Shown here piece by piece: positions 43,829-64,000 of a DNA stretch of 64,000 nt. Made by a program: the position numbers and the translations under genes. Location of the stretch: the IMG/VR virus record IMGVR_UViG_3300042564_002819, positions 248,001 to 312,000 of that record; one strand, given 5' to 3'. A model generated the notes under the pieces. That model was not told the origin of the DNA. It did not search any database and saw only the letters and a list, made by a program, of their open reading frames with translations. How positions within the stretch are numbered: the first letter of the stretch is position 1; each line of letters starts with the position of its first letter.

Positions 43829-43857
43829 TTGACACTGGCATAGACAAGTGTTATTGT
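43829..43857 (+). promoter_or_regulatory. Sigma70-type promoter
   Basis: TTGACA-N17-TATTGT with extended -10. Confidence 0.7.
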
Positions 43858-43882
43858 GAGTGCAACAAGAAAGGAAATACAC

Positions 43883-44179: not shown

Positions 44180-44180
44180 A

Positions 44181-44767: not shown

Positions 44768-44795
44768 AAATAAAGAATAGGTAGCCGCGACTACC

Positions 44796-44927: not shown

Positions 44928-44936
44928 AATAATTTA

Positions 44937-45012
44937 GCCTTCGTAGCTCAACTGGAAGAGCAAGGGATTTCTACTCCCTAGGTTGTGGGTTCGACTCCTG
45001 CCGGGGGCACCA
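44937..45012 (+). tRNA. tRNA-Arg(TCT)
   Basis: GCCTTCG/CGGGGGC; AGGGA-TTTCTAC-TCCCT; CCA. Confidence 0.92.
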
Positions 45013-45021
45013 AAAAAGCTG

Positions 45022-45050
45022 TTGACACAGACTTGGCACTATGCTACAAC
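45022..45050 (+). promoter_or_regulatory. Sigma70-type promoter
   Basis: TTGACA-N17-TACAAC with extended -10. Confidence 0.65.
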
Positions 45051-45067
45051 AAGTTATTGAATAACAC

Positions 45068-45472
45068 ATGAGGAACACTGAGATGAAGACTGCTTACAAG
45101 AACCGTGACGGCGAATGGGTTGTGGCCGAGCAGATCAAGATGAGCCGGTATGACCTTGAAGGTTCGGTAGATTCGATTAAGGCTGCACTGGACGAGGTTC
45201 GCGACCGTGCTACCGCAATGGGTATGGTGGGTGAAGGCACTGTTGACATCAGCCTGAACCGCGGCTTCTACTCGGACGACTACGAAATAGAAGTGGAATA
45301 CTCCTTCACTCGGTATGAATACCCTGTGGAGATGGAGCGGCGTTTGGAGCGTGAGGCCAAGGATAAGGCTGCGGCTGCTGCCAAGCGTAAGGAAGCCGCC
45401 CAGAAGCGGAAACTCAAGAACGATCCTGAGTATGTGGAGTTTGAACGGCTCCGGGCCAAGTTTGGTGGTTGA
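45068..45472 (+). CDS. Hypothetical protein (GC-richer)
   Basis: ORF after promoter; charged C-terminal helix. Confidence 0.7.
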   Translation: MRNTEMKTAYKNRDGEWVVAEQIKMSRYDLEGSVDSIKAALDEVRDRATAMGMVGEGTVDISLNRGFYSDDYEIEVEYSFTRYEYPVEMERRLEREAKDKAAAAAKRKEAAQKRKLKNDPEYVEFERLRAKFGG

Positions 45473-45497
45473 CAACACTCTCCTGCTGTGCTATAAC
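45469..45497 (+). promoter_or_regulatory. Sigma70-type promoter
   Basis: TTGACA-N17-TATAAC with extended -10. Confidence 0.75.
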
Positions 45498-45528
45498 AAC
45501 AGCATAGGGCAACACGAGGAGAAATCAA

Positions 45529-45876
45529 ATGCCTTGTAGAGTCAACGACGAAGACTGGAAACCGCGTAAAGAAACCCGCCACGGGATGGATATCGAATCT
45601 TTCGAAGCTACACTTTGCGGCGTCTTCACTGCTGCAGAGGAAGGCGCCTTTGCGCCTACGGTTGTTGGCGGAGTTGATGGCTTGCTGGATGTGATCGACT
45701 GGAAAGAAGCCGGAGTGAAACGCAAGACCGTTGAAGCATGGTGGAAGCGGCATAAGGCAGAAGATGCTGCCCGCCTTGCTCGCGAATCTGCTGAACGGCG
45801 TAAGGCTGAACTCAAGCGGATTGCGATCGGCAAACTCACTGCAGAAGAACTGGAAGTGTTGGGGATCAAACTCTAA
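45529..45876 (+). CDS. Hypothetical protein
   Basis: GAGGAG SD; MPC start, WW..H...D..R, KLT.EE..VLG. Confidence 0.75.
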   Translation: MPCRVNDEDWKPRKETRHGMDIESFEATLCGVFTAAEEGAFAPTVVGGVDGLLDVIDWKEAGVKRKTVEAWWKRHKAEDAARLARESAERRKAELKRIAIGKLTAEELEVLGIKL

Positions 45877-45886
45877 CACTTTCTGG

Positions 45887-45915
45887 TTGACATCCTACCT
45901 ACACCGTGCTATGTA
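45887..45915 (+). promoter_or_regulatory. Sigma70-type promoter
   Basis: TTGACA-N17-TATGTA with extended -10. Confidence 0.65.
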
Positions 45916-45947
45916 TATTGTATAGGGCAACAAGAGGACAACCACAG

Positions 45948-46199
45948 ATGCCGAATCCTGCTACTGCTCCCCGTGACGAATTGAACGAGTTTACTCGCTC
46001 TGTATGGCTGCTTGGTAACAGCAACTGGGGTAATCACGGTGTACGTCTTCGGAACGGGTTGATTGTCAAACCGATCTACAAGCCCGCAGAAGACGAGACC
46101 AGTGAAGATGCATTCTTCACCGAAGACTATGAATACTGCTGGAACCTGGACGGCACTTCGGTAACCCGCAGGGACTTTGATATGATGGAGATCGTGTGA
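45948..46199 (+). CDS. Hypothetical protein
   Basis: GAGGA SD then ATG 45948. Confidence 0.7.
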   Translation: MPNPATAPRDELNEFTRSVWLLGNSNWGNHGVRLRNGLIVKPIYKPAEDETSEDAFFTEDYEYCWNLDGTSVTRRDFDMMEIV

Positions 46200-46200
46200 T

Positions 46201-46608
46201 ATGATCAGAGACCTATTCGTTCCTGTGGCTGAACTGCTGTTCTGGTTCACCGGCGGAGAACTACTGCTGAATACCTGGTGGTTCTTTGTGTGGGTTGTTG
46301 GTGGTGCGTTCCTTGTAACCTTGCCGCTGTGGTTAGGTATGCGTCTGGCCAGACGTGGTAGTAACCTCAAGTGGATACCTGGCACACTCTTCCTAGTCGG
46401 CTTCTTCCCTGCCTTACTGCTGATCACCAGCCCAGGCATCATCCAAGCCGACTTGATGGAAGAATGCCTACCCGTCCAGACCGTAACAGTGGATACCGCA
46501 CAGGTCAAAGGTATTGAAGTTCGAGTTCGCCAGTGTCGCTTCAAGGCCAACTACTATGACAAAAATTATGGTGAATGGCAAGCCTGGGCGGTTGACCGGC
46601 ACCAATAA
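46201..46608 (+). CDS. Membrane protein
   Basis: GGAG SD; two to three hydrophobic helices. Confidence 0.7.
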   Translation: MIRDLFVPVAELLFWFTGGELLLNTWWFFVWVVGGAFLVTLPLWLGMRLARRGSNLKWIPGTLFLVGFFPALLLITSPGIIQADLMEECLPVQTVTVDTAQVKGIEVRVRQCRFKANYYDKNYGEWQAWAVDRHQ

Positions 46609-46624
46609 CTGTATTATAAGCTGC

Positions 46625-46880
46625 ATAAGGAGAGACCGGCAACTTGTGTAGTGCATGTAGTGACGACTTGCGGATAACAGGTGGGATCGTGACATGTTGT
46701 AAATCTTTATGTAAGGGGTCGACACTTTATATAGAGAGAACGCTGCATACGCTGTGGGACCTCGGCGTATCATTAAGGTGATCAAATCACGCAGGGGTAA
46801 AAGCCCTAATGAGGGGTCCTAGGAATTAAAGGAAATACTGTGAGATATAGAAAGTTTTACGACGACTTCTAGGCTATAAC
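46625..46880 (+). ncRNA. Candidate structured ncRNA or long 5' leader
   Basis: Gap of about 285 nt after TTGACC-N17-TATAAG with many nested helices. Confidence 0.45.
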
Positions 46881-46893
46881 CTAGGAGAATCAA

Positions 46894-47100
46894 ATGGCAA
46901 AATCACCTGTTTACGGCAGAGGCCGTAATCGTAAACATAGAGGGCACCGCGGCCCTGTTCACGCTGCGGCTGCTAACATCAATATGCGTGGCAAAAAAAG
47001 CAAACCTGACCACTGCTGGTGCTGTATTTGTATTGACATGCGTGAAGATATCTTGTATCGTATACACAAGAAGGAGATGAGAGATGAAAGAGACACGTAA
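46894..47100 (+). CDS. Small basic Cys-cluster protein
   Basis: AGGAG SD; R/K-rich N-terminus; HCWCCIC. Confidence 0.65.
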   Translation: MAKSPVYGRGRNRKHRGHRGPVHAAAANINMRGKKSKPDHCWCCICIDMREDILYRIHKKEMRDERDT

Positions 47101-47608
47101 GTATCTAGTATTTTTAGACATTGACGGCGTTTTTACTAGCTCTCGTGTTCACTTTGCACACGCTGCTGCTTATGAAATGTGGCACAGATTTGATCCTGTA
47201 GCAGTTGATTTTATGAACAAGATTCATGACAGATATCCTGTGGAGTTTGTGATCATGAGTACTTGGAAGGACAACCTTCGCAGTGACGATAACAACGTAA
47301 AACACTGGGTTCATGCTGCGTTTGGCAACAGTGGCTTTCGTGGGCAACTTGCTACACCTTGGAAAACAGATCCTGACAACGTCATCTGGCAGCGTAAAGG
47401 TGCAAATGATCGTGCCTACGAAGTAAAAGAATATTTAGAACTATACGCAACAGATATAAAAGATTACATTTTGTTTGATGATAATCGCTATCAATTCAAA
47501 GAAGTGCTAGGCGTTAATCGCCTAGTTCATACAGATCACGAAAATGGTCTGTTATACAAGCATATGCTAAATGCTCATAGTTTGATGGGACAGTGGCACG
47601 AGCGGTGA
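47084..47608 (+). CDS. HAD phosphatase of the Swiss-army-knife RNA-repair type
   Basis: VFLDIDGV, STW, YILFDD, GL. Confidence 0.8.
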   Translation: MKETRKYLVFLDIDGVFTSSRVHFAHAAAYEMWHRFDPVAVDFMNKIHDRYPVEFVIMSTWKDNLRSDDNNVKHWVHAAFGNSGFRGQLATPWKTDPDNVIWQRKGANDRAYEVKEYLELYATDIKDYILFDDNRYQFKEVLGVNRLVHTDHENGLLYKHMLNAHSLMGQWHER

Positions 47609-47640
47609 CATCGCTCGGAATAATAACAAAGGAAACAGAG

Positions 47641-47850
47641 ATGACTAAAGAACAAGTTTTAAAATCGCTACCCACGTTTAAATTGCTGGCATGGGGAGAA
47701 ACCGCAGAAACCAGCGGCAATGGAAAATATGTGCATTTTGATGCAAAAGAATCTAGTACACGTATCTTTACTATTGAAGCAATTCTTGCAGAACTAGATA
47801 AGCGTGACGACAATCCTAACCGAGATTCTAGAAAAAAGAAGAAAAAATGA
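47641..47850 (+). CDS. Hypothetical protein
   Basis: AAGGA SD then ATG 47641. Confidence 0.6.
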   Translation: MTKEQVLKSLPTFKLLAWGETAETSGNGKYVHFDAKESSTRIFTIEAILAELDKRDDNPNRDSRKKKKK

Positions 47851-47933
47851 TTAAGTTGCATATTGCTAATTTGGTTAATATTTTGTTATCCAAATTGCAA
47901 GAGATATTGTATAATAGATTAATAAATTAAAGT

Positions 47934-48506
47934 ATGTGTAAGTTAGTTTTTGTTTATAGTTCTATGAATTCCGGTAAAAGCCTAGCTGTTCTTACCAAAA
48001 ATTATATGTTAAAAGAAAAAGGTTTTAAGACTGTGCTCATGAAGCCGGCAGTTGATACTAGGACTGCGGCAACTGTGGCTACACGCTTAGGCTTAGAAGA
48101 GCCCTGTGTTGTACTAGGAACAACTGATTTGCCTAGTCATACTATACTAAAATCAGCACACGACAAGCCTGATTTTATTATTGTTGACGAAGCACAGTTT
48201 TTAACAAGCGAACAAGTTTGGGACCTAGCTGGCTTAGTCGACAACTGGGGCATAAACGTGTATTGCTATGGTCTACGACTTAACTGGCAAGGAGAGTTTT
48301 TTACAGGATCGGAAGCACTGATGAAAATTGCTGATGTGCTAGAACCAATCGAAAACTTCTGTCAAATAAATAAAGGAGCACTAGCATTCTTTCATATTAA
48401 AAAAGCAGGTGGCGATAATCCTGTAGAAGTTGGAATGGAAGACATGTATGACACTGCGTCTAGAAAAGCCTGGAAGCAGTGGTATGACACAAAAAGGCCT
48501 CTGTAG
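47934..48506 (+). CDS. tdk: Thymidine kinase
   Basis: YSSMNSGKS, KPAVDTR, VDEAQFL, CYGLR. Confidence 0.93.
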   Translation: MCKLVFVYSSMNSGKSLAVLTKNYMLKEKGFKTVLMKPAVDTRTAATVATRLGLEEPCVVLGTTDLPSHTILKSAHDKPDFIIVDEAQFLTSEQVWDLAGLVDNWGINVYCYGLRLNWQGEFFTGSEALMKIADVLEPIENFCQINKGALAFFHIKKAGGDNPVEVGMEDMYDTASRKAWKQWYDTKRPL

Positions 48507-48572
48507 CTCAATGGATAGAGCAGCAGACTTCGAATCTGTAGGTTGGGCGTTCGAGTCGCTCCAGGGGTACCA
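48497..48572 (+). tRNA. tRNA-Arg(TCG)
   Basis: GCCTCTG/CAGGGGT; GCAGA-CTTCGAA-TCTGT; CCA; overlaps the tdk stop. Confidence 0.9.
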
Positions 48573-48634
48573 AAATAACACTTGATCTCTTACTTTGCAT
48601 AGTGTAAGCTGTAAGTATAGTAAAGGAGAATCAA

Positions 48635-48814
48635 ATGTGGAAACTTTATATTATGGAATCTGAACGCGGTTGGGGTCAACGAGTTGACGAAATACTAAAG
48701 TTCGACACGTATGAAGAGGCCGATAAATACAAAAAAGAATTTAACAGTAAAAACAATCTTCCTGAAGTGCCTGATTGGTACATGTATGCAGATGGACCTG
48801 TTAAAGTAGATTAA
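48635..48814 (+). CDS. Small hypothetical protein (59 aa)
   Basis: AAGGAG SD; MESERGWGQR...VPDWY; not in track. Confidence 0.7.
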   Translation: MWKLYIMESERGWGQRVDEILKFDTYEEADKYKKEFNSKNNLPEVPDWYMYADGPVKVD

Positions 48815-48898
48815 GTCGCTGTGGTGTAATGGTAGCCACGACAGCTTGAGGTGCTGTTGCCGCAAGGCGTGGGAGTTCGAATCTCCCCAGCGACACCA
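48815..48898 (+). tRNA. tRNA-Leu(GAG)
   Basis: GTCGCTG/CAGCGAC; ACAGC-TTGAGGT-GCTGT; long variable arm; CCA. Confidence 0.92.
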
Positions 48899-48914
48899 AT
48901 TTTAAGGAATAAAA

Positions 48915-49565
48915 ATGGCTCTAACTAGATTAATTGGCGACATTCATGGAATGGTAAATGACTACAAGGCCTATTCTATTGGGGATTTTAGTGGTCCTAC
49001 AATTCAACTTGGCGACTTTGGAGTTGGGTTCGGTCAAAATGATTACTGGTATGAAAGCATTAATTCTTTTCATAAAGCAGGCAACCATCGGTTTATTCGT
49101 GGTAATCATGATAATCCTGCTCTGTGCAAAACTATGGACGGATACATTACAGACGGTAGCATTGAGAATGATGTAATGTTTATTGGTGGTGCTTGGAGCA
49201 TCGATAATCCTAATGCACCTCCGGGTTGGTATAAGCGTACAAAGGACTATGACTGGTGGGAGGAAGAAGAACTCAGCAGTGACGAACTTGAACGTATGAT
49301 TGATATCTATGCTGTAGTTAAACCACGTGTGATGATTACACATGATTGTCCTAACATTATCAGCAGACAGATGTTTTTCAACAGTGGATTTCTAAAAGGT
49401 CCTGAATACCCCAACCGTACAAGTGCTGCGTTTACTCGTATGTTGGATATTCATCAACCCGACGAATGGTACTTTGGACACTGGCATTTTACAATGCAAT
49501 ACAAATACGGACGCACACTATTTCACTGTCTTGGTGAACTAGATTACGTAGACGTAGAACTTTAA
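48915..49565 (+). CDS. Calcineurin-like metallophosphoesterase
   Basis: GDIHG, GDFG, RGNHD, THDCP, FGHWH. Confidence 0.9.
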   Translation: MALTRLIGDIHGMVNDYKAYSIGDFSGPTIQLGDFGVGFGQNDYWYESINSFHKAGNHRFIRGNHDNPALCKTMDGYITDGSIENDVMFIGGAWSIDNPNAPPGWYKRTKDYDWWEEEELSSDELERMIDIYAVVKPRVMITHDCPNIISRQMFFNSGFLKGPEYPNRTSAAFTRMLDIHQPDEWYFGHWHFTMQYKYGRTLFHCLGELDYVDVEL

Positions 49566-55353: not shown

Positions 55354-58300
55354 ATGAGATTAAGAAACCTTTTTGAAGTACAAGTGCAACCAGGTGAACG
55401 CAGAGGATTTTCGCTGCGGTTGAAGCGTCTTGAAGATTTGCAAGTAAAAATTGCAGAAATACAAAATACTATAAGCGAACTTGGTAATGTTAGCGTTCCA
55501 GAAAACTTAAAAAAACAAATGGAAGATCTTATCGATGCTGCTAAAATAGAAAAAGAAAAAATCTATGCAGAAGTATCTGACGCAGAAGTAAAAAATCCAA
55601 GAATTCAAGGAATACCTGGATCTGTCATGAAGTTACTTAGAGGCATAGAAAAAAATGCTTCAACTATAATGAACGCATACAGAAAAACTGGAAAATATCT
55701 CTATAGAGGAATCAAATCTTCCGAAGACGCACTTTATGGAAAACCTTTTGACATCAGAAAAGCCAAGGATAGTAATGTAGATTTAAGTAATGCATTAAAT
55801 CAATCCTTAGCAGACCAAGGATTTAATGCTAGAAGAGACAACACTACTTTTACTTCTGGTTCTTATAATCAGGCTAGTAATTACGGTACTGTGTATATAA
55901 TATTTCCTAGAGATGGGTTCTCATTCCATTACAGTAAAAAGATAAGAGACCTTGTTTTAGATACCGGCAAGATTGATATGTTACTGGATCCCGAAATAAC
56001 AGGTTATATCGAAAGTGCTATACGTTCTAACTGGAGCAATCTCAAAAACTATTTTTCTTATAAATTTAGTGGAGATAAATTCTTTACAGGTTATGAATAT
56101 CAAAAAGATTTAGATGGGTTACAACGTGCAGTAGCAGACGGTGTGCTTCCACAAGAATTTGCAAAATATAAGACTTTTTATGATCTAGTTGATCCTGCAA
56201 AAGTTATAGCTAATTTTCAATACAATCAAACTGATCTCGACAGTGCTATAACTTCCGAACATGAAGTCATGATTACAGGACCGTATTATGCTGTTAAAAC
56301 AGAGTCCTTTCAAGATTATATTGACAAATATATTAAAATGACAGCAAATGGTGAATTTGATGTCACTCCAGATAACAAAAAAGAAAAAACTACTTTAAAT
56401 CAAAAAATACAATCTATAGTAGGCGGTTCCGCGCCTGAGTTTGCAATAGGAGATTGGGTGCAGCATAAGTACGAAGGATTTAAAGGTGAAGTTGTTGACT
56501 ATTACCATACCAATGACTTTGTTCAAATTAAAGATTATGCCGGAAAACTAAAATTAGTCAATAAGAAAAATATTGATAAAATTAAAACTCCTGAGATGCC
56601 CGACTACCAGCCCGGCGATAAAGTTTATCTAAGAACAAAAGACACAGAATGGGAATATTATAATAATAAAAAATACAAGGTAGTAGACTCTGATAAGTTT
56701 ACCGTAACAGTTCAAAAAGGCAGTTACGACACCACAATTACATTACCTAAATTGTTAACCGAACCTGCTCCTAAATTTGATACCAAAGATCCAAGTGTAG
56801 GAGACACAGTTCATGTTACCAAGGGCGATTTTGAAAACATGTACGGAACTATTACATATGTTTCTAGTTACAGTAAAGATATTGATGTTGACTTCGGAGA
56901 CAGCGATTCGCACACTGTTCAAAAAGGATCTTACGAAGTTATTGATCCTGCAACAAAACCTGCAGATGCAAACTCTATTGCATCAAAGTTTAAAGAAGGT
57001 GATTACGTTAGAATCTCTGACGACGGGTTTGATTACAGTGGTCTTGTAGCGGTAATTAATAAACCTGGTTTATCAAAATCAAGAGTATATCCGTTCGGCG
57101 AAAAAAGTTATGCTTTAAGTATAAAAAATTCTAGATTAAAAGCTATTGATGAAGATGAATTTAAAAAACAATCGTTTAGCATAACAGATCAAGTAGTTGT
57201 ATCTGGCGGCAAGCATGATGGAAAGAGTGGAAAACTTAATTATGTAAGCTTTGATGGAACTATGGAAATAGTTGTCAGTAGTGGTAACACCATAGAAGTA
57301 CCCGGAAAATATGTTTTTAATCAAAACGTAAATGGTTCTCCTGAAAATAACGAGAATAAAGAAACAATTAAAAAAGGTGATTTTGTAAAAATCTCAGACG
57401 ACTCGGACTTGTTCCCAGGTTCTGTAGCAAAAGTAGTTGTAAAGAATTCCGGCGAAAAATCTACAATATTAGTAAACAACGACAACAATCTCGATTATAT
57501 TATTGATACAAAATATCTAACCAAGATTGATGAAAATGAATTTAACAATAAAAAGCTGTCAACCGGCGACGAAGTCAATGTCACAGACGGATATTATAAA
57601 GGAAAAACTGGAAAAATAAAATCGTTTGGGACTGATGGTCCTGTAAGAGTTGATATAACTTCGCCGTCCACAGGGGATACATTTACAATTAAGGTACTTC
57701 CACAATACTTGGAAAAAATAAATCAAAGCAGTGACGACTTAATTGATTTAATGGATCTTGAGTTTGAACCGATGGACGAGCCTACTGATTTTAAAAATAA
57801 TGAAACTAAAAAATTTAAAGTCGGCGACAGCGTAAAAGTAATTAATGGTAAACACAAAGGAAAAACTGGAAAAATAAATTACCTATATACGTATACAAAA
57901 GAAGCGTATGTTGACTTCGACGGTGAATATCACGACATTGAGTTAAAAGACTTAGAGTTAGACAAAGAAGAATCAAAAACTGATAGCAATTTTAACAAAG
58001 ACGAATTAAAAAAGCTAATCAGTCAAGGAAAAGAAAAAGGTTTTATAACCTATAATCAACTAAACGATGTAGTGCCTTCGGACAAAGTTACTTCTGAAGA
58101 AATTGAAGATATAATGGATATGTTAAATGAATTAGGAATCAATTTAGTTGATGCTGAAAAAGACTCGGCTCCATCAGGTGAAACTCCACAGGAATTACAA
58201 GCAAGAATAAACGATCCAGATACAAAAGCGTTCCTTAAACAAGCATTTGCAGATCCTGATGTAAAAGAACTAGTGAGTAATATAATCAAAAAGAAAATTA

Positions 58301-58413
58301 TAACAACCGACGACATTGATAATATATCTGTTCTAGTAGGATATGACAAGTATTTGTTTGGCATAAAACCATATATCGAACTTAAAGGCGTTGTATACCA
58401 ACCTACTACTTGA
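55354..58413 (+). CDS. Multidomain protein: putative ADP-ribosyltransferase, about 8 KOW repeats, sigma70 region 1.1
   Basis: YLYRG / FTS / EHEV triad; GD.V.V..G..KGK.G.I repeats; LKKLISQGKEKGFITYNQLNDVVP...IEDIMDMLNELGINLV. Confidence 0.75.
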   Translation: MRLRNLFEVQVQPGERRGFSLRLKRLEDLQVKIAEIQNTISELGNVSVPENLKKQMEDLIDAAKIEKEKIYAEVSDAEVKNPRIQGIPGSVMKLLRGIEKNASTIMNAYRKTGKYLYRGIKSSEDALYGKPFDIRKAKDSNVDLSNALNQSLADQGFNARRDNTTFTSGSYNQASNYGTVYIIFPRDGFSFHYSKKIRDLVLDTGKIDMLLDPEITGYIESAIRSNWSNLKNYFSYKFSGDKFFTGYEYQKDLDGLQRAVADGVLPQEFAKYKTFYDLVDPAKVIANFQYNQTDLDSAITSEHEVMITGPYYAVKTESFQDYIDKYIKMTANGEFDVTPDNKKEKTTLNQKIQSIVGGSAPEFAIGDWVQHKYEGFKGEVVDYYHTNDFVQIKDYAGKLKLVNKKNIDKIKTPEMPDYQPGDKVYLRTKDTEWEYYNNKKYKVVDSDKFTVTVQKGSYDTTITLPKLLTEPAPKFDTKDPSVGDTVHVTKGDFENMYGTITYVSSYSKDIDVDFGDSDSHTVQKGSYEVIDPATKPADANSIASKFKEGDYVRISDDGFDYSGLVAVINKPGLSKSRVYPFGEKSYALSIKNSRLKAIDEDEFKKQSFSITDQVVVSGGKHDGKSGKLNYVSFDGTMEIVVSSGNTIEVPGKYVFNQNVNGSPENNENKETIKKGDFVKISDDSDLFPGSVAKVVVKNSGEKSTILVNNDNNLDYIIDTKYLTKIDENEFNNKKLSTGDEVNVTDGYYKGKTGKIKSFGTDGPVRVDITSPSTGDTFTIKVLPQYLEKINQSSDDLIDLMDLEFEPMDEPTDFKNNETKKFKVGDSVKVINGKHKGKTGKINYLYTYTKEAYVDFDGEYHDIELKDLELDKEESKTDSNFNKDELKKLISQGKEKGFITYNQLNDVVPSDKVTSEEIEDIMDMLNELGINLVDAEKDSAPSGETPQELQARINDPDTKAFLKQAFADPDVKELVSNIIKKKIITTDDIDNISVLVGYDKYLFGIKPYIELKGVVYQPTT

Positions 58414-58437
58414 CATCTTTGATAAAAAGTGTATACT
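58410..58437 (+). promoter_or_regulatory. Sigma70-type promoter overlapping the upstream stop codon
   Basis: TTGACA-N16-TATACT. Confidence 0.6.
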
Positions 58438-58446
58438 ACAAACACT

Positions 58447-59340
58447 ATGAATCAAAAATTACAAGATCATTTAATCGGGTCACTTGTTGGCCTTGCCGTC
58501 GGTGATGCAGTAGGCACTACTGTTGAATTTAAACCGCGTGGCTCATTTCCTAAGATTGTTGACATGATCGGCGGCGGCCCTTTTAGATTGCCAGTAGGGT
58601 ATTGGACAGATGATACATCTATGGCATTGTGCCTAGCAGAAAGTCTTATAGCATATCCACTGCTTGATAAAAAAGATTTGTTAACTCGTTTTTGTAACTG
58701 GTATAAGAATGGACATAATTCTTCTACCGGTCGTTGCTTTGACATTGGTAATACAACTGTCTCTGCACTAGAAGAATTTATTCACAGTGGTCAAACGAAT
58801 AACAATCCTGAAGACTTTTATGCAGGTAATGGATCTATTATGCGATTGTCTCCTGTGGCAATTGCAAATTATAAAGACTTACACAAAGCAATTAAAATTG
58901 CACGTGAACAAAGTGAAACAACTCATGAAACTATTAAAGCAACTGCTTCTTGTGAGTTGCTTGCAGAAATTTTAGTTAGAGCATACACTGCTGAAACTAA
59001 ACAGCAAGTAATGGATATTGAATGTCCGTTACATTGGCCCGAACCTGTTTGCGATATTGTTGCATCTAGCGTTGTTAAAAAAACTGAAGCAGAAATTAAG
59101 TCTTCGGGTTACGTTATTGACACATTAGAAGCAGCCGTCTGGGCATTTTTAAATACAGACAACTTTGAGGATGCAGTTTTAATAGCAGTTAATCTTGGAC
59201 ACGATGCTGATACAGTCGGTGCTGTAACAGGACAAATTGCCGGAGCATACTATGGAGAAACCGGAATTCCTAAACATTGGCTAGAAAAGCTTTATAACCA
59301 TGAACACATCAGAAACCTTGCAATCAAACTTTCCGAATAA
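58447..59340 (+). CDS. ADP-ribosylglycohydrolase (DraG/ARH family)
   Basis: GLAVGDAVG, WTDDT, FDIGNTT, AGNGSIMR, TH, NLGHDADT. Confidence 0.95.
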   Translation: MNQKLQDHLIGSLVGLAVGDAVGTTVEFKPRGSFPKIVDMIGGGPFRLPVGYWTDDTSMALCLAESLIAYPLLDKKDLLTRFCNWYKNGHNSSTGRCFDIGNTTVSALEEFIHSGQTNNNPEDFYAGNGSIMRLSPVAIANYKDLHKAIKIAREQSETTHETIKATASCELLAEILVRAYTAETKQQVMDIECPLHWPEPVCDIVASSVVKKTEAEIKSSGYVIDTLEAAVWAFLNTDNFEDAVLIAVNLGHDADTVGAVTGQIAGAYYGETGIPKHWLEKLYNHEHIRNLAIKLSE

Positions 59341-59821
59341 AGTAGTAGTTTTCTTAGACCTCGACGGTCCTATCATTGATCTTAAAACTTACAAGACCAA
59401 CCCGATTGTGTCTTATTATAGAACTGGTGGAAATTCAAAGGCTATCGAAAATCTTGTAAAGTTGTGCGACGAGTTTGGTCTTGAAATCGTCACTAATTCT
59501 ATGCACAACTATTACCAGTTAGGAGATGATACTCTTCAGGACGATTTAGTATCCTGGGGTATTCCTGTAGATCTTTTTCACAGTGACTGGAGAACTATTT
59601 TTCCTAAAGTTAATTACAAGGAAATAAAAAGCACTGTTCGGGGAATTGGTAGACTTTACGCTATTGAACAATGGATCAAAGAACATCCTGGGTATAACTG
59701 GATTTGTTTTGATGATCGAAAGTTTACAGAAGATCCGAGACTGATACATATTTCTAGAGAAAACGGAATCGACCAAGGATATTACGAGCAGGCAAGAAAA
59801 ATTCTAAAAACACTTGCTTGA
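59300..59821 (+). CDS. HAD phosphatase of the Swiss-army-knife RNA-repair type
   Basis: VFLDLDGP, NS, R...I..W, ICFDD. Confidence 0.7.
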   Translation: MNTSETLQSNFPNKVVVFLDLDGPIIDLKTYKTNPIVSYYRTGGNSKAIENLVKLCDEFGLEIVTNSMHNYYQLGDDTLQDDLVSWGIPVDLFHSDWRTIFPKVNYKEIKSTVRGIGRLYAIEQWIKEHPGYNWICFDDRKFTEDPRLIHISRENGIDQGYYEQARKILKTLA

Positions 59822-59846
59822 CAGCAGTGTCGATTCCTGTTACTTT
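59818..59846 (+). promoter_or_regulatory. Sigma70-type promoter
   Basis: TTGACA-N17-TACTTT with extended -10. Confidence 0.7.
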
Positions 59847-59867
59847 GTTGCAAACATGGAGATCTAA

Positions 59868-60401
59868 ATGAGCGAACCCGTCTGCACTGTAATGGTTGGC
59901 TTGCCTGCTATGGGCAAGTCCACTCTTGTTAAAGGCATGTGGAAAGATGAAAGCACTTTCATCTACAGCACTGACGATCTTCTTGAGGCCGCTGCTAAAG
60001 AACTTGGCAGCACTTACAATGAAGTGTTTGAAACGCTAATCAAGTCAGTTACTGAGGCAGCAAACGGATCTCTCGATGTTGCCGTCAAGAACCGTCAAGA
60101 CATCATCTGGGATCAAACCAACTTGGGTGCAGGCAAGCGTCGTAAAATTATTAATCGTATGCGTCAGGCAGGTTATCAAGTTCGTTGTGTTTGTATCGTT
60201 CCTCCTGAAGCAGGACACATCAGTAATCTCAAGGACTGGAAGTATCGTTTGGCTAACCGCCCTGGTAAAACTATTCCAGATGAGGTGTTGACAAACATGT
60301 ATCGTTCGTTTACACTGCCTACAGTAGAGGAAGGGTTTGATATGATTACCTTCTATAACATGCACGGTGCCCTGTTGGGTGTTGACTATGGAGAAGAATA
60401 A
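59868..60401 (+). CDS. Polynucleotide 5'-kinase-like P-loop protein
   Basis: VGLPAMGKST, STDD, WDQTN, RPGK.IP, EEGFD. Confidence 0.85.
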   Translation: MSEPVCTVMVGLPAMGKSTLVKGMWKDESTFIYSTDDLLEAAAKELGSTYNEVFETLIKSVTEAANGSLDVAVKNRQDIIWDQTNLGAGKRRKIINRMRQAGYQVRCVCIVPPEAGHISNLKDWKYRLANRPGKTIPDEVLTNMYRSFTLPTVEEGFDMITFYNMHGALLGVDYGEE

Positions 60402-61558
60402 TGCACTACCGTTTTCCTGAGATCCGTCACATTAGTGATGTGCTTCCGCACATCGAAGGTCGTGAGGAATTTGTTGTAGCAGAGCGTGAAGGCTACACTG
60501 TGATCAACTACGTGGTTGCAATGGCCGACACCTTTGACATGACTGGAGCAGATGACTTGGGCGGTGCAATCCGTCGTGAATGTCGTGGCTTGATTTTTGA
60601 CCGTGATGGTAACATCATGAGCCGTCCGTTTCACAAGTTCTTCAACATCAACGAGCGTGAAGAAACTCAAGCACATCGGTTGGATCTCAGTGTTTTGTTT
60701 GACCATGTGATCATGGAAAAGATGGATGGTTCGATGATCCGTCCTATCTTAGTCGATGGACACTTGCGTCTTGCTACCAAGATGGGTGTAACTGAAGTGG
60801 CCATGCAGGCCGAAACTTGGCTAGCTGCTCAGGACCCTATGTTGAAGAAGTGGATGGCTATCATGATGGCACAGGGTATTACTCCGATCTTCGAGTGGGT
60901 AAGCCCGTTCAATCAGATTGTGTTGGCGTATGAAACCGCTGATCTTGTGCTATTGGCACTGCGTAACAACATCACTGGCGAATACCTTGATGTCGGCGAT
61001 CCAAAAGACGACAAACTGTGGACTGTGGTTCCGCAGTATGGTTCAGTAGAAGGCAACCTTGGTGACTATATTGCTCGTCAGCGTGGTGCAGAAGGTCGCG
61101 AAGGTGACATCATTCGCTTTGCGGATGGGCATATGGTCAAGGTCAAGAACGACTGGTATGTGCGTATTCACAAGACTGTGGATCGCATCGTGTTCGACCG
61201 TAACATTGTTGCTCTTATCCTCAACGAGGAAGTGGACGACGTGTTGCCGATGTTGCCGCAGGTTCAAGCAGATCGTGTTCGTGTATTCGAGCGTCGATTC
61301 GCCGAACGGCTTCACGCTGTGGTTGAAAACTACGAACGCTACTGGAACACTGTAGTAGCATCGGGTCTTGACCGCAAGCGTTATGCTCAAGAGTGGATGC
61401 CTACTATTAAGGGCAACGATCCGTTTGCTACTAACTACGTGTTTGGTCGCTTTGCTGGTCGAGATGGTCGTCAAATGATTCTTGATCATATCGAAAAGAG
61501 CATCACTACCAACGTTCGTTGGGATGAATGTGCAGCGTGGATGGGGATGGGTCCGTGA
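60401..61558 (+). CDS. RNA ligase 1 (T4 Rnl1-like)
   Basis: ECRGLIF, RPFHKFFN, EKMDGSMI, FEW, EG, KVKNDWY. Confidence 0.92.
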   Translation: MHYRFPEIRHISDVLPHIEGREEFVVAEREGYTVINYVVAMADTFDMTGADDLGGAIRRECRGLIFDRDGNIMSRPFHKFFNINEREETQAHRLDLSVLFDHVIMEKMDGSMIRPILVDGHLRLATKMGVTEVAMQAETWLAAQDPMLKKWMAIMMAQGITPIFEWVSPFNQIVLAYETADLVLLALRNNITGEYLDVGDPKDDKLWTVVPQYGSVEGNLGDYIARQRGAEGREGDIIRFADGHMVKVKNDWYVRIHKTVDRIVFDRNIVALILNEEVDDVLPMLPQVQADRVRVFERRFAERLHAVVENYERYWNTVVASGLDRKRYAQEWMPTIKGNDPFATNYVFGRFAGRDGRQMILDHIEKSITTNVRWDECAAWMGMGP

Positions 61559-61797
61559 CCGATCCCCTCTTTTCTATCTGTAAACGTCTTCCTACAGACT
61601 ACAGTGATTATGGCGGAGAGATCAAGCGTTGGGACTACGAAGGCGTAGACTATCCTGACTGTAGTTGTGGTTGTCGCTGGTTTTTGCCACTTGAAGGCGA
61701 CTTAGGTTCTGACTGGGGTGTTTGCAGTAAATTAGATGGCCCAAGAGCAGGATTGCTAACTTTTGAACATCAAGCAGGAAAGGGCTGCTTTGAATAA
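61555..61797 (+). CDS. Cys-rich small protein (DUF3027-like)
   Basis: CSCGCRWFLPLEGDLGSDWGVC...TFEH...C; GTGA overlap. Confidence 0.65.
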   Translation: MTDPLFSICKRLPTDYSDYGGEIKRWDYEGVDYPDCSCGCRWFLPLEGDLGSDWGVCSKLDGPRAGLLTFEHQAGKGCFE

Positions 61798-61802
61798 CTA
61801 TT

Positions 61803-61961
61803 ATGAACTTTGACGAATGGTTTGAACAACACCGAGACATTTTAGCAGGTCTGCTACGCAATGATCAACTAGAAGCACTATGGATTGCGTGGTATGCTGG
61901 CTACCAAAAAGGTCTTGACGACAGAATTAAAATTGATAAAGAATTTTGGACACTAAAATGA
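61803..61961 (+). CDS. Small hypothetical protein (52 aa)
   Basis: MNFDEWF...AWYAGY; ATGA overlap downstream; not in track. Confidence 0.55.
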   Translation: MNFDEWFEQHRDILAGLLRNDQLEALWIAWYAGYQKGLDDRIKIDKEFWTLK

Positions 61962-62320
61962 AATACTGGTCACTGTTTTTAGACGACATTCGGTTTCCGG
62001 AAGATGTAAAATTCTTCTATGGCCCCTATGAGAATCTGCGTATTTGCCGCAGCATGGATGATGCTGTGTGGGCAGTCAAGCAGTATGGTTTGCCTACATT
62101 TATTAGTTTCGACCATGACCTTGCTGACGTTCACTACATCATCGGCGATGGCGAAAAGACTGGCTACACCTTTGCTAAATGGTTCTGTGATTATGTGATG
62201 GATAACGATTTGATTTTGCCTGTGGGCTTTGGATATCATGTTCACAGCATGAATCCAGTTGGTGCTGTGAACATTAGAACTTACATGGAAAACTTTTTAA
62301 AGGCATATGACCGTGACTAA
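61958..62320 (+). CDS. Cyclic-phosphate-processing receiver-like protein
   Basis: LFLDDIR, ISFDHDL, TGY, HSMNPVG. Confidence 0.8.
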   Translation: MKYWSLFLDDIRFPEDVKFFYGPYENLRICRSMDDAVWAVKQYGLPTFISFDHDLADVHYIIGDGEKTGYTFAKWFCDYVMDNDLILPVGFGYHVHSMNPVGAVNIRTYMENFLKAYDRD

Positions 62321-62540: not shown

Positions 62541-62977
62541 ACTACGCAGAAAATCCAATTACAGATTTAGCAGACTGCATCGCTCACGCTCAGTATGTGG
62601 GCTTCTCAGACATTGAATACGAACGAATGGACTACGATGCTGTTCGCAATGCTAGAACCGCCGAAGAAAAGCGAGCAAGCATGAGTGCTACAGTAAAAGC
62701 ACTTCGTCGTCCAACTACACGAGACTTTGGGGTCTATGCAATGTTTCCGCAAACTTGGGGCAGCACTGCTCTAGGACACGGCGGAATGGGCGGAGCAGCC
62801 ATGACTAAAGCATATACTGTTGTGTTGGAATGTTATGCCACGCAGGAGTTTTTGGTTTACTTTGGCAGTGAGTTCTGTTATAAAGTAGATAGACGCAGCA
62901 AGAATCTTGATGTGTTTATCGAAGACTGTCGTAACCACTGCTTGGCAAGCAAACGAGATAGCGAGAAATATCAATGA
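62537..62977 (+). CDS. Conserved-looking phage hypothetical protein
   Basis: FPQTWGSTALGHGGMGGAAMT.AYT. Confidence 0.75.
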   Translation: MNYAENPITDLADCIAHAQYVGFSDIEYERMDYDAVRNARTAEEKRASMSATVKALRRPTTRDFGVYAMFPQTWGSTALGHGGMGGAAMTKAYTVVLECYATQEFLVYFGSEFCYKVDRRSKNLDVFIEDCRNHCLASKRDSEKYQ

Positions 62978-63339
62978 TCGACTTTGAGAATCTAAATTTT
63001 GGTGATCGAATATATGTCGTTTCTGAAAGAAACAATGCGTTTACCAAAAAGAAAATTGAAAAGACAGACGAAAACGGAATCACTTGGTTTCGTTATGACA
63101 GAGATCACTGGGAGTATTCAATCAGCGAAATTGTATACTGCGGTAAAGTAACATATGTAGAAGAAGGCGAAGTTCGTTTTAGCGAAGACCGTTTAACTGA
63201 ATATCACTTTCTGTATCCAGATGGTCAAATCTATCACGAAAATGAACCTGGATACAACGATGATTTTGATGACTGGTTTCTTACCAAAGAAGAAGCAGAA
63301 GCATACATAGACTTTAAAAAACAAACAAAAAATTCTTAA
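62974..63339 (+). CDS. Hypothetical protein
   Basis: ATGA overlap; C-terminal FLTKEEAE. Confidence 0.7.
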   Translation: MIDFENLNFGDRIYVVSERNNAFTKKKIEKTDENGITWFRYDRDHWEYSISEIVYCGKVTYVEEGEVRFSEDRLTEYHFLYPDGQIYHENEPGYNDDFDDWFLTKEEAEAYIDFKKQTKNS

Positions 63340-63344
63340 GGCAA

Positions 63345-63800
63345 GTTAGGAAAGTAAAGGCTATATACGACACAGTTTAGCCGTGAGGTCACCTTGAGCC
63401 CGCAATGCGGTCGGATCTGGTGGTGTTCCTGGCGTGGTTCTTGCACGCCTTGTAGTCCGTTATCGTGGCTCCTTGACCGGAGCGAATGAGTAGGCTCTCC
63501 TGACACTTGGATCCTACAGACGACGAGACAGTTGGTCATATTATTGTCTCGTGAGTCCGCGTTGTAATTAAGCACAAAATAAAAAGGTACAGCACAACCG
63601 CCTTTCCCTTACCAAGTAGGTTTTTGAATATGACTGTGATGAAAGAACTCAGATAGAGTCTTTTTTGCCTTAGCCTGTAAGAAGGCTAAGTGTGAATCCA
63701 AATCTAGATAGAATCTCTCATAAAAAACAATATGTTAAGTATTGAATGAGACAAGTGTCGAAATGAAAAACTTAACTGATCAACGTTAGTTGATCACACT
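63345..63800. ncRNA. Large structured non-coding region (ncRNA or origin-like)
   Basis: Gap of about 550 nt, GC-elevated first half, at least 8 hairpins. Confidence 0.45.
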
Positions 63801-63836
63801 ACGATAATTCAAAATAGATTTAAGGTGAATTATGAC

Positions 63837-63865
63837 TTGACAGAACACCGGTTGAGTTGTATGTT
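63837..63865 (+). promoter_or_regulatory. Sigma70-type promoter
   Basis: TTGACA-N17-TATGTT. Confidence 0.65.
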
Positions 63866-63886
63866 GAACTATAGAGGAGAAGATTT

Positions 63887-64000
63887 ATGATCAATAAAGA
63901 ACCTAAGCAATACCTTTGGGTCAAGCAGGGCCGTGCTCCGATTTTTGTTACAGATTTAGTAGCACTATACAAGGATCACGACTTTGATCCTGCTGAGGAT
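63887..64000 (+). CDS. 5' end of a gene running off the window
   Basis: GAGGAG SD then ATG. Confidence 0.65.
   Translation, partial: MINKEPKQYLWVKQGRAPIFVTDLVALYKDHDFDPAED

What the first reader, a model, noticed from the sequence alone, without database searches (positions are those of the whole stretch)
63340..63830. Largest gap in the window is a densely structured non-coding element
Seen: GGCTA/TAGCC, CCGCA/TGCGG, GGCGTG/CACGCC (63431-63449), GCTCC/GGAGC, GTAGG/CCTAC, ACGAGACAGT/ATTGTCTCGT (63523-63552), AAAGG/CCTTT, CTTAGCCT/AGGCTAAG (63669-63690) and TGATCAAC/GTTGATCA (63777-63796). A GC-rich half is followed by an AT-rich half. Inference: a large ncRNA, an intron remnant, or an origin/packaging element.
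Basis: inference. Interest (0 to 1): 0.6.

Follow-up and report, generated by a model that had tools for sequence, protein, structure and literature searches.

The report
New large structured RNA of jumbo phages
The largest gene-free stretch of this 330-kb lake-water phage genome encodes a roughly 450-base, intricately folded RNA that is conserved in more than fifty uncultured freshwater and marine phage contigs, matches no described RNA family, and has no known function.

Summary
The gap 63340-63886 lies between two + strand genes. All nine inverted repeats are present, and eight are kept by compensatory changes in relatives.

The window comes from a 330-kb T4-like jumbo phage from lake water. 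A conserved 26-base pattern and a covariance model found the element once per genome in 52 contigs (32 distinct sequences, four subgroups, freshwater and marine). It is better conserved than the flanking proteins: 86% nucleotide identity against 60% amino-acid identity.

On the model alignment 98% of cells pair, against 86% in shuffles. Eighteen of 34 pairs change on both sides (0 of 500 shuffles reach this). Frequent G-U pairs fix the + strand. A loop-to-linker pseudoknot covaries in seven versions. Substitutions show no codon periodicity, so it is not coding.

Rfam 15, GenBank phages, 185,000 prokaryote genomes and the cultured relatives PA5oct and Atu_ph07 gave no match. The genomes checked encode no reverse transcriptase or Ro60.

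Best reading: a free-standing gene for a new large, stable, trans-acting RNA of the GOLLD/ROOL kind, with helically phased repeats upstream. The main rival is an origin or primer-RNA module like T4 oriE. Transcription is not shown and the function is unknown.

The parts
63339..63368 (+). Control region. Three AGG(C/A)W repeats 9-10 nt apart, the last inside the conserved AGGCTATATA motif. Candidate binding array and promoter for the RNA.
   Evidence: Subgroup A relatives have 2-4 AGGCW copies at 9-11 nt spacing, always ending in AGGCTATATA. Subgroup B has CTAAYACA every 11 nt, 3-7 copies, at the same place. The array occurs only here on the + strand of the 330-kb genome. GGCTATATA is not a recurrent promoter motif. 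No sigma-70-like promoter was found here. The function is inferred.
63380..63422 (+). 5' domain. Small hairpin P0 (63380-82 / 63387-89, GUGA loop). Helix P1 (CACC 63390-93 / GGUG 63419-22) encloses the conserved UUGAG, hairpin P2 (63400-03 / 63407-10) and GGAUCU.
   Evidence: P1 has 3 of 4 pairs with changes on both sides (CACC/GGUG, UACC/GGUA, CGCU/AGCG). P2 has a different sequence but a hairpin in every subgroup.
63431..63449 (+). Hairpin P3 (GGCGTG / CACGCC). Present in subgroups A and C, absent in B and D.
   Evidence: The stem is fully replaced by complementary sequences in L011, L034 and L046.
63468..63483 (+). Hairpin P4 (GCTCC / GGAGC) with a conserved UGAC-containing loop. Absent in subgroup D.
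   Evidence: At least five stem versions all pair: GCUCC/GGAGC, UCUCC/GGAGA, UCUC/GAGA, UGGUU/AACCA and UGGU/ACCA.
63485..63517 (+). Most conserved module. Linker AAUGAGUA overlaps hairpin P5 (GTAGG 63490-94 / CCTAC 63513-17; inner TCC 63498-500 / GGA 63509-11) with loop UGACACUU.
   Evidence: Almost invariant in all 32 distinct sequences. One pair covaries (A-U in 20 sequences, G-C in 12). This stretch supplied the search pattern.
63519..63557 (+). Hairpin P6 (ACGAGACAGT 63523-32 / ATTGTCTCGT 63543-52), closed by G63519-C63557 and A63520-T63556. Its loop (63533-42) forms the pseudoknot.
   Evidence: 7 of 8 model pairs change on both sides, and both closing pairs covary. G-U pairs in 25 and 24 of 32 sequences fix the + strand.
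63535..63634 (+). Pseudoknot PK1. The P6 loop GTCATATT (63535-42) pairs with AATATGAC (63627-34).
   Evidence: Seven complementary versions occur across subgroups. Mean duplex energy is -10.5 kcal/mol for cognate partners and -5.6 for non-cognate ones.
63559..63626 (+). Central junction. Conserved GCGUUG and UAAGCA. Helix Px (CAA 63575-77 / TTG 63624-26) encloses hairpin P7 (63583-88 / 63600-05, conserved 11-nt loop ending AACC) and hairpin P8 (63607-09 / 63618-20). The invariant GGUUU follows.
   Evidence: Px occurs in four versions: CAA/UUG, GUA/UAC, GAU/AUC and GAA/UUC, all pairing. P7 has 2 pairs with changes on both sides. P8 is CCUU/AAGG versus CCAU/AUGG.
63644..63661 (+). Variable hairpin P9 (AGAACTC / GAGTCT), specific to subgroup A.
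   Evidence: Seen in the alignments. The region differs in sequence and length between subgroups.
63663..63697 (+). U-rich linker, hairpin P10 (CTTAGCCT 63669-76 / AGGCTAAG 63683-90) and conserved GUGUGAAU. This is the end of the core shared by all subgroups.
   Evidence: The 3' strand is invariant. The 5' strand varies with wobble-compatible and compensatory changes (CUUAGCC, CUUGGCU, UUUGGCU, UUUAGCC, CUCGGCC).
63700..63821 (+). 3' domain of subgroup A, a three-way junction. Closing helix AAATCTA 63700-06 / TAGATTT 63815-21. P11 is 63734-43 / 63767-76. P12 is TGATCAAC 63777-84 / GTTGATCA 63789-96.
   Evidence: P12 has three covarying versions. P11 is GUUAAG/CUUAAC, GUUAAU/AUUAAC or GUUG/CAAC. 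RNAalifold on eight subgroup A sequences predicts the junction. Subgroup B has two different covarying hairpins at this place.
63837..63889 (+). Not part of the RNA. Sigma-70-like promoter TTGACA-17-TATGTT (63837-65), ribosome-binding site GAGGAG (63875-80) and ATG (63887) of the downstream 81-codon gene.
   Evidence: 10 of 12 consensus matches. The hexamers are identical in L004/L005 although the gene behind them differs.
62974..63339 (+). Upstream neighbour, a complete g100-like gene of 121 codons. It is not part of the element.
   Evidence: Pfam PF23772, E = 2e-05, covering profile positions 2-103 of 105. Homologues in L002, L003 and L006 have no RNA behind them.

Best explanation
The gap holds a free-standing gene for a large, highly folded non-coding RNA read from the + strand. 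The core shared by all relatives is about 260-330 nt (63382-63701 here). In this phage a 3' three-way junction extends it to about 63821, giving roughly 440-455 nt.

The RNA folds into about a dozen helices. Two long-range contacts lock them together: the loop of P6 pairs with the linker after P8, and helix Px closes over P7 and P8. Several long single-stranded stretches are nearly invariant, above all the 33-nt module 63485-63517.

Most likely (inferred) it is made as a discrete, stable RNA during infection. Its synthesis would be controlled by a phage DNA-binding protein that recognises the helically phased repeats directly upstream. It would then act in trans, as an RNA-only or RNA-protein machine like the orphan phage RNAs GOLLD and ROOL. 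The invariant unpaired stretches would be the surface that contacts a conserved partner.

A role in the tRNA and translation take-over of these tRNA- and tmRNA-bearing phages is a guess, not a finding.

Shown: conservation, fold, strand, non-coding nature, one copy per genome, restriction to an uncultured aquatic jumbo-phage group.
Inferred: transcription, RNA ends, action in trans, the partner.
For: - Conservation exceeds that of the neighbours. The element is 85.7% identical over 546 nt to L004/L005, while the flanking protein is 60% identical.
- The pattern search found 29 metagenome and 29 viral loci.
- Model R1 scores 145-308 bits in all 52 sources, and 253 bits in the window.
- There is one copy per genome.
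- Covariation: 98.3-98.4% of cells pair, against 85.6-85.8% in shuffles and 29-46% with slid partners. Eighteen of 34 pairs change on both sides; 0 of 500 shuffles reach this.
- Further helices and pseudoknot PK1 covary.
- G-U pairs dominate at four model pairs, which would be A-C mismatches on the other strand.
- Not coding: substitutions fall evenly on the three codon positions (12/14/10 and 19/25/24). The minus-strand frame is broken in L011, L014 and L017.
- Independent module: the neighbours differ. In subgroup A it lies near the Rnl1, cREC and g100-like genes. In subgroups B-D it lies between gp46 and the baseplate hub.
- A promoter for the next gene lies between the RNA and that gene.
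- Precedent: the related jumbo phage PA5oct makes abundant ncRNAs of unknown function (PMC7318152). GOLLD and ROOL are large, pseudoknotted phage RNAs of unknown function (PMC12286853).
Against: - No transcript has been seen. All runs holding the sequence are lake-water DNA, or 'RNA-Seq' libraries kept only as contigs that the tool rates as probably DNA.
- No recognisable promoter lies upstream and no intrinsic terminator downstream on the + strand. A discrete RNA would therefore need a phage-specific promoter and processing.
- Nothing points to a particular partner or activity.
- The phased upstream repeats and the AT-rich downstream stretch also fit an origin.
- The single-sequence folding energy is not exceptional.
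Confidence: 0.6

Rival explanations
1. Replication-origin module of the T4 oriE or R-loop type. The evenly spaced repeats would be iterons for an initiator. The transcript that starts behind them would fold, run into the AT-rich stretch (63700-63830), form an R-loop and prime leading-strand synthesis, as ColE1 RNA II and the T4 origin transcripts do.
For: - Repeats spaced 9-11 nt lie directly upstream in subgroups A and B, with a different motif in each subgroup.
- T4 oriE is the one T4 origin with evenly spaced 12-nt repeats, and it lies by the baseplate gene 5 region near a switch of transcription direction (PMC3016281).
- In subgroups B-D the element lies between gp46 and an oppositely oriented baseplate-hub gene.
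- The sequence downstream is AT-rich.
Against: - In this genome the element lies deep inside a long + strand block, with no GC-skew switch.
- The syntenic gp46-hub interval, which does lie at the skew minimum, has no copy and no repeat array.
- Known T4 R-loop origins need no specific RNA sequence. This RNA keeps a pseudoknotted fold and 33 almost invariant bases across phages whose gp46 proteins are only 57% identical.
- The AGGNW array in the window alone is not above chance: 1 seen, 0.65 expected per strand.
Confidence: 0.15
2. Cis-acting leader. The structure would be a long 5' untranslated region, or a processing or attenuation signal, that controls the genes downstream.
For: - All neighbouring genes are on the same strand.
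- No terminator separates the element from the next gene.
- Read-through from upstream genes is possible.
Against: - The gene behind the element differs. It is an 81-codon ORF in the window and L016, another gene in L004/L005, a 149-codon ORF in subgroup B, short ORFs of either direction in C, and a 173-codon ORF in D.
- A good sigma-70-like promoter lies between the structure and the next gene, and it is conserved.
- No riboswitch or leader family matches.
Confidence: 0.07
3. RNA part of a virion or packaging machine (as phi29 pRNA), or a DNA packaging signal.
For: - The RNA is large, folded and phage-encoded.
- The loop-linker pairing PK1 could in principle form between molecules, as the interlocking loops of pRNA do.
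- In subgroups B-D the element lies beside baseplate genes.
Against: - T4-type packaging is not known to need an RNA or a pac site (own knowledge).
- There is no similarity to any Rfam family.
- The element lies 18 kb from the end of a record without terminal repeats.
- G-U pairs show that selection acts on RNA, not on a DNA site.
Confidence: 0.04
4. Remnant of a self-splicing intron or of another mobile element.
For: - The position in the genome differs between subgroups.
- A SegE-like GIY-YIG homing endonuclease lies two genes upstream in subgroup C.
- The element is more GC-rich than its surroundings.
Against: - No group I or group II intron model matches, even at E = 10.
- No split host gene exists: the g100-like gene is complete.
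- No reverse transcriptase is present in G000, G001, G004 or G005.
- There is one copy per genome.
- A decaying remnant would not keep compensatory changes over four subgroups.
Confidence: 0.03
5. A small protein gene on the minus strand (63336-63575, 79 codons), or hairpins that arose by chance.
For: - An 80-codon frame is also open in L004/L005, and the two products align at 55% identity.
- The single-sequence folding z-score is unremarkable.
Against: - Protein identity (55%) is far below DNA identity (86%).
- Substitutions show no codon periodicity.
- The frame is broken in L011, L014 and L017.
- Indels of 1 and 2 nt occur between close relatives.
- There is no Pfam match.
- Covariation rules out chance.
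Confidence: 0.02

Closest known systems
GOLLD and ROOL RNAs (large 'ornate' RNAs of phages and prophages)
   Same: Encoded by phages. Several hundred nucleotides long, with many helices and pseudoknots and long conserved unpaired stretches. Known from comparative analysis of metagenomes, including lake and marine ones. No neighbouring protein partner and no known function (PMC12286853).
   Different: No match to their Rfam models, so it is unrelated in sequence and architecture. It is smaller (about 260-455 nt against 600-800 or more). It lies about 15 kb from the tRNA island rather than beside it. Whether it forms multimers is unknown.
ncRNA001-004 of Pseudomonas jumbo phage PA5oct
   Same: Gene-free, actively transcribed regions of 236-619 nt in a jumbo phage whose gp46 is the closest cultured match (48% identity) to that of subgroup B. 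Two of them make up 1-5% of phage reads. Function unknown (PMC7318152).
   Different: Model R1 finds nothing anywhere in PA5oct or Atu_ph07. The PA5oct RNAs lie elsewhere in that genome. No conserved fold has been reported for them.
T4 oriE (origin with evenly spaced 12-nt repeats) and R-loop origins oriF/oriG
   Same: Evenly spaced short direct repeats next to a transcribed, AT-rich region. In subgroups B-D the element neighbours baseplate genes at a change of gene direction.
   Different: T4 origins share no conserved RNA fold, and R-loop formation needs no specific sequence. Here the RNA fold is the conserved thing. In the window there is no skew or strand switch.
ColE1 RNA II (folded pre-primer RNA)
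   Same: A transcript of several hundred nucleotides whose folding matters, lying upstream of a replication start (own knowledge; mentioned).
   Different: No antisense partner, no RNase H site and no origin evidence here. The system is a phage, not a plasmid. Not testable with these tools.
phi29 pRNA
   Same: A phage-encoded structured RNA that works as part of a machine through loop-loop pairing (own knowledge; cited in the reference list seen).
   Different: pRNA is about 170 nt and belongs to small podoviruses with protein-primed genomes. There is no sequence or model similarity.

Membership tests
Any of the 4227 Rfam 15 families (including GOLLD, ROOL, OLE, HEARO, group I/II introns, RNase P, tmRNA, 6S, SRP, T-box, Y RNA-like, riboswitches) | Score against the family covariance model | tested here: not met
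   Window 63200-64000 at E up to 10 gave only three chance-level hits of 11-17 bits, all outside or at the edge of the element. Six relatives (31 kb) at E up to 1 gave nothing in the element. The gathering-threshold scan of the whole window finds only tRNAs and the tmRNA elsewhere.
GOLLD / ROOL kind (ornate phage RNAs) | Phage-encoded, large, many conserved helices with pseudoknots, no coding capacity | tested here: met
   Phage contigs only, and none in 185,579 prokaryote genomes by pattern. There are 12 or more helices plus PK1 and Px. Non-coding.
GOLLD / ROOL kind (ornate phage RNAs) | Homo-oligomeric RNA-only cage | not testable with these tools
   Needs in vitro transcription and cryo-EM or native gels.
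Group I / group II intron (or remnant) | Interrupts a gene whose two parts form one reading frame; intron core model match; reverse transcriptase or homing endonuclease inside | tested here: not met
   The g100-like gene upstream is complete. Neighbours vary. No intron model hit. No ORF inside. No RT in the genomes checked.
tmRNA / tRNA-like RNA | tRNA-like acceptor and T arm, tag reading frame | tested here: not met
   ARAGORN finds nothing in 63300-63900. The phage's tmRNA is at 13086-13425. A candidate tag frame in the window is not kept in subgroup B (reading of the alignment).
RNase P RNA | Model match and the conserved P4 strands | tested here: not met
   No Rfam RNase P hit. Short look-alike strings (GUAGGCU, AACCGCC) recalled from E. 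coli M1 RNA lie in a different order and in local hairpins. By eye only, so this is a lead that failed, not a rigorous test.
Retron / DRT-type ncRNA | Reverse transcriptase encoded beside the RNA | tested here: not met
   PF00078 is absent from G000, G001, G004 and G005, while the control genomes score.
Y RNA-like (YrlA) with Ro60 | Ro60 (TROVE) protein in the same genome; tRNA-like module | tested here: not met
   PF05731 is absent from the four phage records. No Rfam hit.
T4 oriE-like origin | Cluster of evenly spaced short direct repeats | tested here: met
   Subgroup B has an 11-nt period with up to 7.2 copies. Subgroup A has 2-4 AGGCW copies at 9-11 nt. In the window alone the array is not above chance.
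T4 oriE-like origin | Location at a switch of transcription direction and nucleotide skew | tested here: not met
   There is no switch near genome position 311 kb. The feature is met only loosely in subgroups B-D, where a hub gene on the other strand lies 0.2-1 kb downstream.
T4 oriE-like origin | Replication starts there | not testable with these tools
   Needs marker-frequency data or 2D gels from infected cells.
Cis-regulatory leader / riboswitch | Constant association with one downstream gene or gene family | tested here: not met
   The downstream genes differ. A promoter lies between the element and the next gene.

The most novel reading that the evidence does not exclude
A new class of large functional RNA that aquatic jumbo phages carry as a working machine. 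It could be a ribozyme, or a self-assembling or protein-recruiting RNA that handles tRNAs or the translation apparatus. The 33-nt invariant P5 module and the two UGAC-bearing loops would form its active or binding surface. The upstream repeats would be a dedicated switch.
Probability: 0.2. Interest if true: 0.85.

Novelty: new variant of a known kind. Interest (0 to 1): 0.7.

Why it matters
Large, intricately folded RNAs outside the ribosome are rare. Past examples (RNase P, group I and II introns, tmRNA, and more recently OLE, GOLLD and ROOL) each opened new biochemistry.

This family is a well-supported addition. It has a 260-330-nt shared core with covarying pseudoknots. It is found in four diverged subgroups of uncultured freshwater and marine jumbo phages and is absent from every library searched. 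Across these phages it is better conserved than the proteins compared.

It gives RNA structural biologists a defined target: short, single-copy, with natural variants. It gives phage biologists a marker and an unexplained conserved function in a widespread aquatic phage group. If the origin reading is right instead, it would be the first phage origin defined by a conserved folded RNA.

Tried and rejected
- **Single-sequence folding.** Not informative: z = -0.41 and -1.35.
- **GenBank phages.** Megablast and blastn with the window element and with subgroup B and C copies gave no match.
- **First search pattern.** The 19-mer from 63420-63438 brought two chance hits in coding DNA (L007, L010). 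Pattern AAGCACAAANTAAAANGGTAC brought two more false loci (L044, L045). All four were dropped.
- **Expression.** The run search found 20 lake-water DNA runs and 4 runs labelled RNA-Seq. All are kept as contigs only and are rated probably DNA. In two of them the only piece laid on the stretch falls inside the element, which shows conservation, not transcription.
- **Promoter.** GGCTATATA is not a recurrent motif in the genome. No sigma-70-like site lies upstream and no + strand intrinsic terminator lies downstream. The hairpins P12 (window) and 5069-5086 (L031) score as minus-strand terminators, but the G-U pairs put the RNA on the + strand.
- **Cultured relatives.** PA5oct and Atu_ph07 were searched whole, and their syntenic regions with filters off. 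Nothing scored above 8.8 bits.
- **Prokaryote genomes.** The pattern gave no hit.
- **Partner proteins.** Reverse transcriptase and Ro60 are absent.
- **Origin test.** No GC-skew switch. The syntenic gp46-hub interval of this genome is filled with ORFs and has no repeat array.
- **Look-alikes by eye.** Resemblances to RNase P, the 16S 3' end, 5S rRNA, hammerhead and C/D-box motifs are confined to one subgroup or fall inside covarying local hairpins. All were rejected.
- **Literature.** Full-text searches for the conserved motifs and for jumbo-phage structured RNAs found no description of this element.
- **Not done.** The extra helices were therefore counted with my own scripts and not with the count of structure pairs. 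The large protein searches, structure prediction and complex prediction were not used, because the element is not a protein. No genetic code other than table 11 was used.
Full report
**Setting.** The window is bases 248001-312000 of a 330,024-bp IMG/VR virus record, estimated 93% complete, with no end repeats found. The genome is 37% GC. The window carries T4-type genes: rIIA, an Rnl1-type RNA ligase and NrdA. It also carries 12-13 tRNA genes and a permuted, alpha-type tmRNA. Public runs that hold the stretch are lake-water metagenomes. It is therefore an uncultured freshwater jumbo phage of the T4-like kind. The gp46 protein of subgroup B, which is 57% identical to this phage's own, finds its closest cultured matches (47-48% identity) in PA5oct, Phosso and Atu_ph07.

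**The observation.** The gap runs from 63340, after the stop of a complete g100-like gene, to 63886. A sigma-70-like promoter (63837-65), a ribosome-binding site and the ATG of an 81-codon gene (63887) close it. The GC-rich then AT-rich layout is real. It is the largest gene-free stretch of the window once two spurious minus-strand frames are set aside. On its own the sequence does not fold better than shuffles.

**Relatives.**
- The upstream protein found five related viral contigs. Two of them, identical over this stretch, hold the element at 85.7% identity over 546 nt, although the protein beside it is only 60% identical.
- A third contig holds a 76%-identical copy 5 kb away from that gene.
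- A 26-base degenerate pattern from the most conserved stretch then found 29 metagenome loci (Tara Oceans, ENA and JGI marine and freshwater samples) and 29 viral contigs of up to 382 kb.
- A covariance model built from 27 sequences scores 145-308 bits in all 52 sources searched, 253 bits in the window. It finds exactly one copy in each whole record searched that has it.
- The 32 distinct sequences fall into four subgroups. A includes the window and has a 3' extension. B lacks hairpin P3. C is a third form. D is 258 nt and lacks P3 and P4.

**It is an RNA fold, read from the + strand.**
- On the model-based alignments 98.3-98.4% of cells form standard pairs, against 85.6-85.8% when partners are shuffled and 29-46% when they are slid.
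- Eighteen of 34 pairs show changes on both sides. None of 500 shuffles reaches the observed number of such pairs, the percentage of cells paired or the covariation score.
- These alignments are fitted to the model. However, the same compensatory changes are visible in plain MAFFT alignments.
- Four pairs are G-U in most sequences (for example 25, 24 and 31 of 32). On the other strand they would be A-C mismatches.
- My own scripts add helices that the automatic consensus missed. P4 and P10 each have five or more pairing versions, and the 3' hairpin P12 has three. Helix Px has four versions.
- The scripts also show a pseudoknot between the loop of P6 and the linker after P8, with seven complementary versions. 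Mean cognate duplex energy is -10.5 kcal/mol against -5.6 for non-cognate pairs.
- In subgroup A the part from 63700 to 63821 folds into a three-way junction whose arms also covary.

**It is not coding.** Substitutions between the window and six relatives fall evenly on the three codon positions. The 79-codon minus-strand frame is broken in several relatives. Its product is less conserved (55%) than the DNA (86%). One- and two-base indels separate close relatives.

**Anatomy in the window.**
- 63339-63368: repeats ending in AGGCTATATA.
- P0: 63380-89.
- P1: 63390-93 / 63419-22, around UUGAG, P2 (63400-10) and GGAUCU.
- P3: 63431-49.
- P4: 63468-83.
- Near-invariant AAUGAGUA plus P5: 63485-63517.
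- P6: 63519-57.
- GCGUUG and UAAGCA.
- Px: 63575-77 / 63624-26, around P7 (63583-605) and P8 (63607-20).
- PK1: 63535-42 / 63627-34.
- P9: 63644-61.
- P10: 63669-90, followed by GUGUGAAU.
- 3' junction: 63700-63821.
- After that come the promoter and start of the next gene.

**Surroundings.**
- In subgroup A the element lies in a loosely syntenic block behind an RNA ligase, a cREC-REC protein and the g100-like gene. The adjoining genes differ between contigs.
- In subgroups B, C and D it lies between the recombination nuclease genes gp47/gp46 (plus one to three small genes, in B a single RusA/PDDEXK-like gene and in C one for a SegE-like endonuclease) and an oppositely oriented baseplate-hub gene and a gp5-like gene.
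- This phage has that same gp46-hub interval at 128-132 kb, without the RNA.
- The RNA gene is thus a self-contained module that has moved.
- Directly upstream of it, every subgroup A and B member has short direct repeats one helical turn apart: AGGCW in A and CTAAYACA in B, up to seven copies. In this genome the array is found only here. This spacing suggests a protein bound to one face of the DNA, which is an inference.

**What it is not.**
- No Rfam 15 family matches, in the window or in relatives, even at permissive thresholds.
- GenBank phages, PA5oct and Atu_ph07 (whole genomes, and the syntenic place with filters off) and 185,579 prokaryote genomes give nothing.
- No reverse transcriptase or Ro60 is encoded in the four records checked.
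- It interrupts no gene.
- The full-text search found no paper with its conserved motifs.

**How it most likely works.**
- I take it for a gene for a stable, trans-acting, highly folded RNA (confidence 0.6). The reasons are a fold with pseudoknots, long invariant unpaired stretches that are kept across phages whose proteins have diverged strongly, one copy per genome, and independence from its neighbours. These are the marks of RNAs that act as machines or as partners of conserved macromolecules.
- The nearest known things in kind are GOLLD and ROOL, which are large, pseudoknotted phage RNAs of unknown function that form RNA-only cages (PMC12286853). Also close are the abundant orphan ncRNAs of the related phage PA5oct (PMC7318152).
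- It is not a member of either group.
- The upstream repeats would be its control region.
- What it binds or does is unknown. A link to the tRNA, tmRNA and RNA-repair equipment of these phages is only a guess.

**Main rival (0.15).** The element could be an origin module like T4 oriE, the one T4 origin with evenly spaced 12-nt repeats, which lies by the baseplate gene 5 region near a strand switch (PMC3016281). For this reading: the repeats, the AT-rich stretch downstream, and the location in subgroups B-D. Against it: no skew or strand switch here, the empty syntenic site at the skew minimum, and the fact that known T4 R-loop origins need no particular RNA sequence, whereas here the RNA fold is what is conserved. 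A cis-acting leader, a packaging RNA, an intron remnant, a small minus-strand gene and chance are each unlikely, for the reasons given under the rivals.

**Limits.** Transcription, RNA ends and function are not shown. The runs labelled RNA-Seq are contigs and probably DNA. Homologues were collected with an exact pattern from the most conserved stretch, so more distant members were missed and conservation of that stretch is partly by selection. The extra helices rest on my own scripts rather than on a formal covariation test.

Noticed in passing
window 13086-13425 (+): A permuted (two-piece, alpha-proteobacterial type) tmRNA gene in a phage. It scores 104 bits against alpha_tmRNA and 93 bits against tmRNA_permuted. 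ARAGORN did not report it. It may hint at an alphaproteobacterial host.
   Followed up: no
window 40301-49000: A tRNA island of 12 (ARAGORN) to 13 (Rfam) genes at 40752-48898. Two sizeable gene-free stretches lie beside or inside it: 40301-40749 (449 nt) and 46551-46902 (352 nt). These were not examined for further RNAs.
   Followed up: no
window 58429-62320 (+): A run of RNA-repair-looking genes just upstream of the element: ADP-ribosylglycohydrolase (58429-59340), T4 Rnl1-type RNA ligase (60401-61558) and a cyclic-phosphate-processing receiver domain protein, cREC_REC (61946-62320).
   Followed up: partly
window 55354-58413 (+): A 1019-codon ORF with short matches to phage sigma-factor, antiterminator and MotB-like families, plus an unknown-function PHROG. 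It may be a transcription factor of the phage.
   Followed up: no
genome G000:C1:125000-132950 (outside the window): The cumulative GC-skew minimum, which coincides with a switch of gene direction, lies at about 125 kb, next to gp46 (127993-129762) and the baseplate hub (132215-132949, minus strand). This is where subgroups B-D carry the RNA. In this genome the interval holds only ORFs.
   Followed up: partly
L049:9055-10530 (PA5oct NC_071039.1 75704-77180): The syntenic place in PA5oct, between the RusA-like gene and gp337, is annotated with only four ORFs of 39-50 codons. It could hold an unrelated non-coding element. Model R1 finds nothing there, and it is not among the four published PA5oct ncRNAs.
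   Followed up: partly
window 63651-63661 and 63706-63716: An 11-nt direct repeat (AGATAGAGTCT / AGATAGAATCT) flanks hairpin P10. It is conserved in subgroup A. The first copy is part of P9 and the second lies next to the closing helix of the 3' junction. Its meaning is unknown.
   Followed up: no
L028:4388-4834 (subgroup C): A SegE-like GIY-YIG homing endonuclease gene (Pfam E = 2e-35) lies two genes upstream of the RNA in subgroup C only. It may have helped to move or reshuffle this locus.
   Followed up: no
genome G000:C1:205000-245000 (outside the window): A GC-rich island (41-50% GC against 37% overall) with reversed skew lies just before the window. It was not examined.
   Followed up: no
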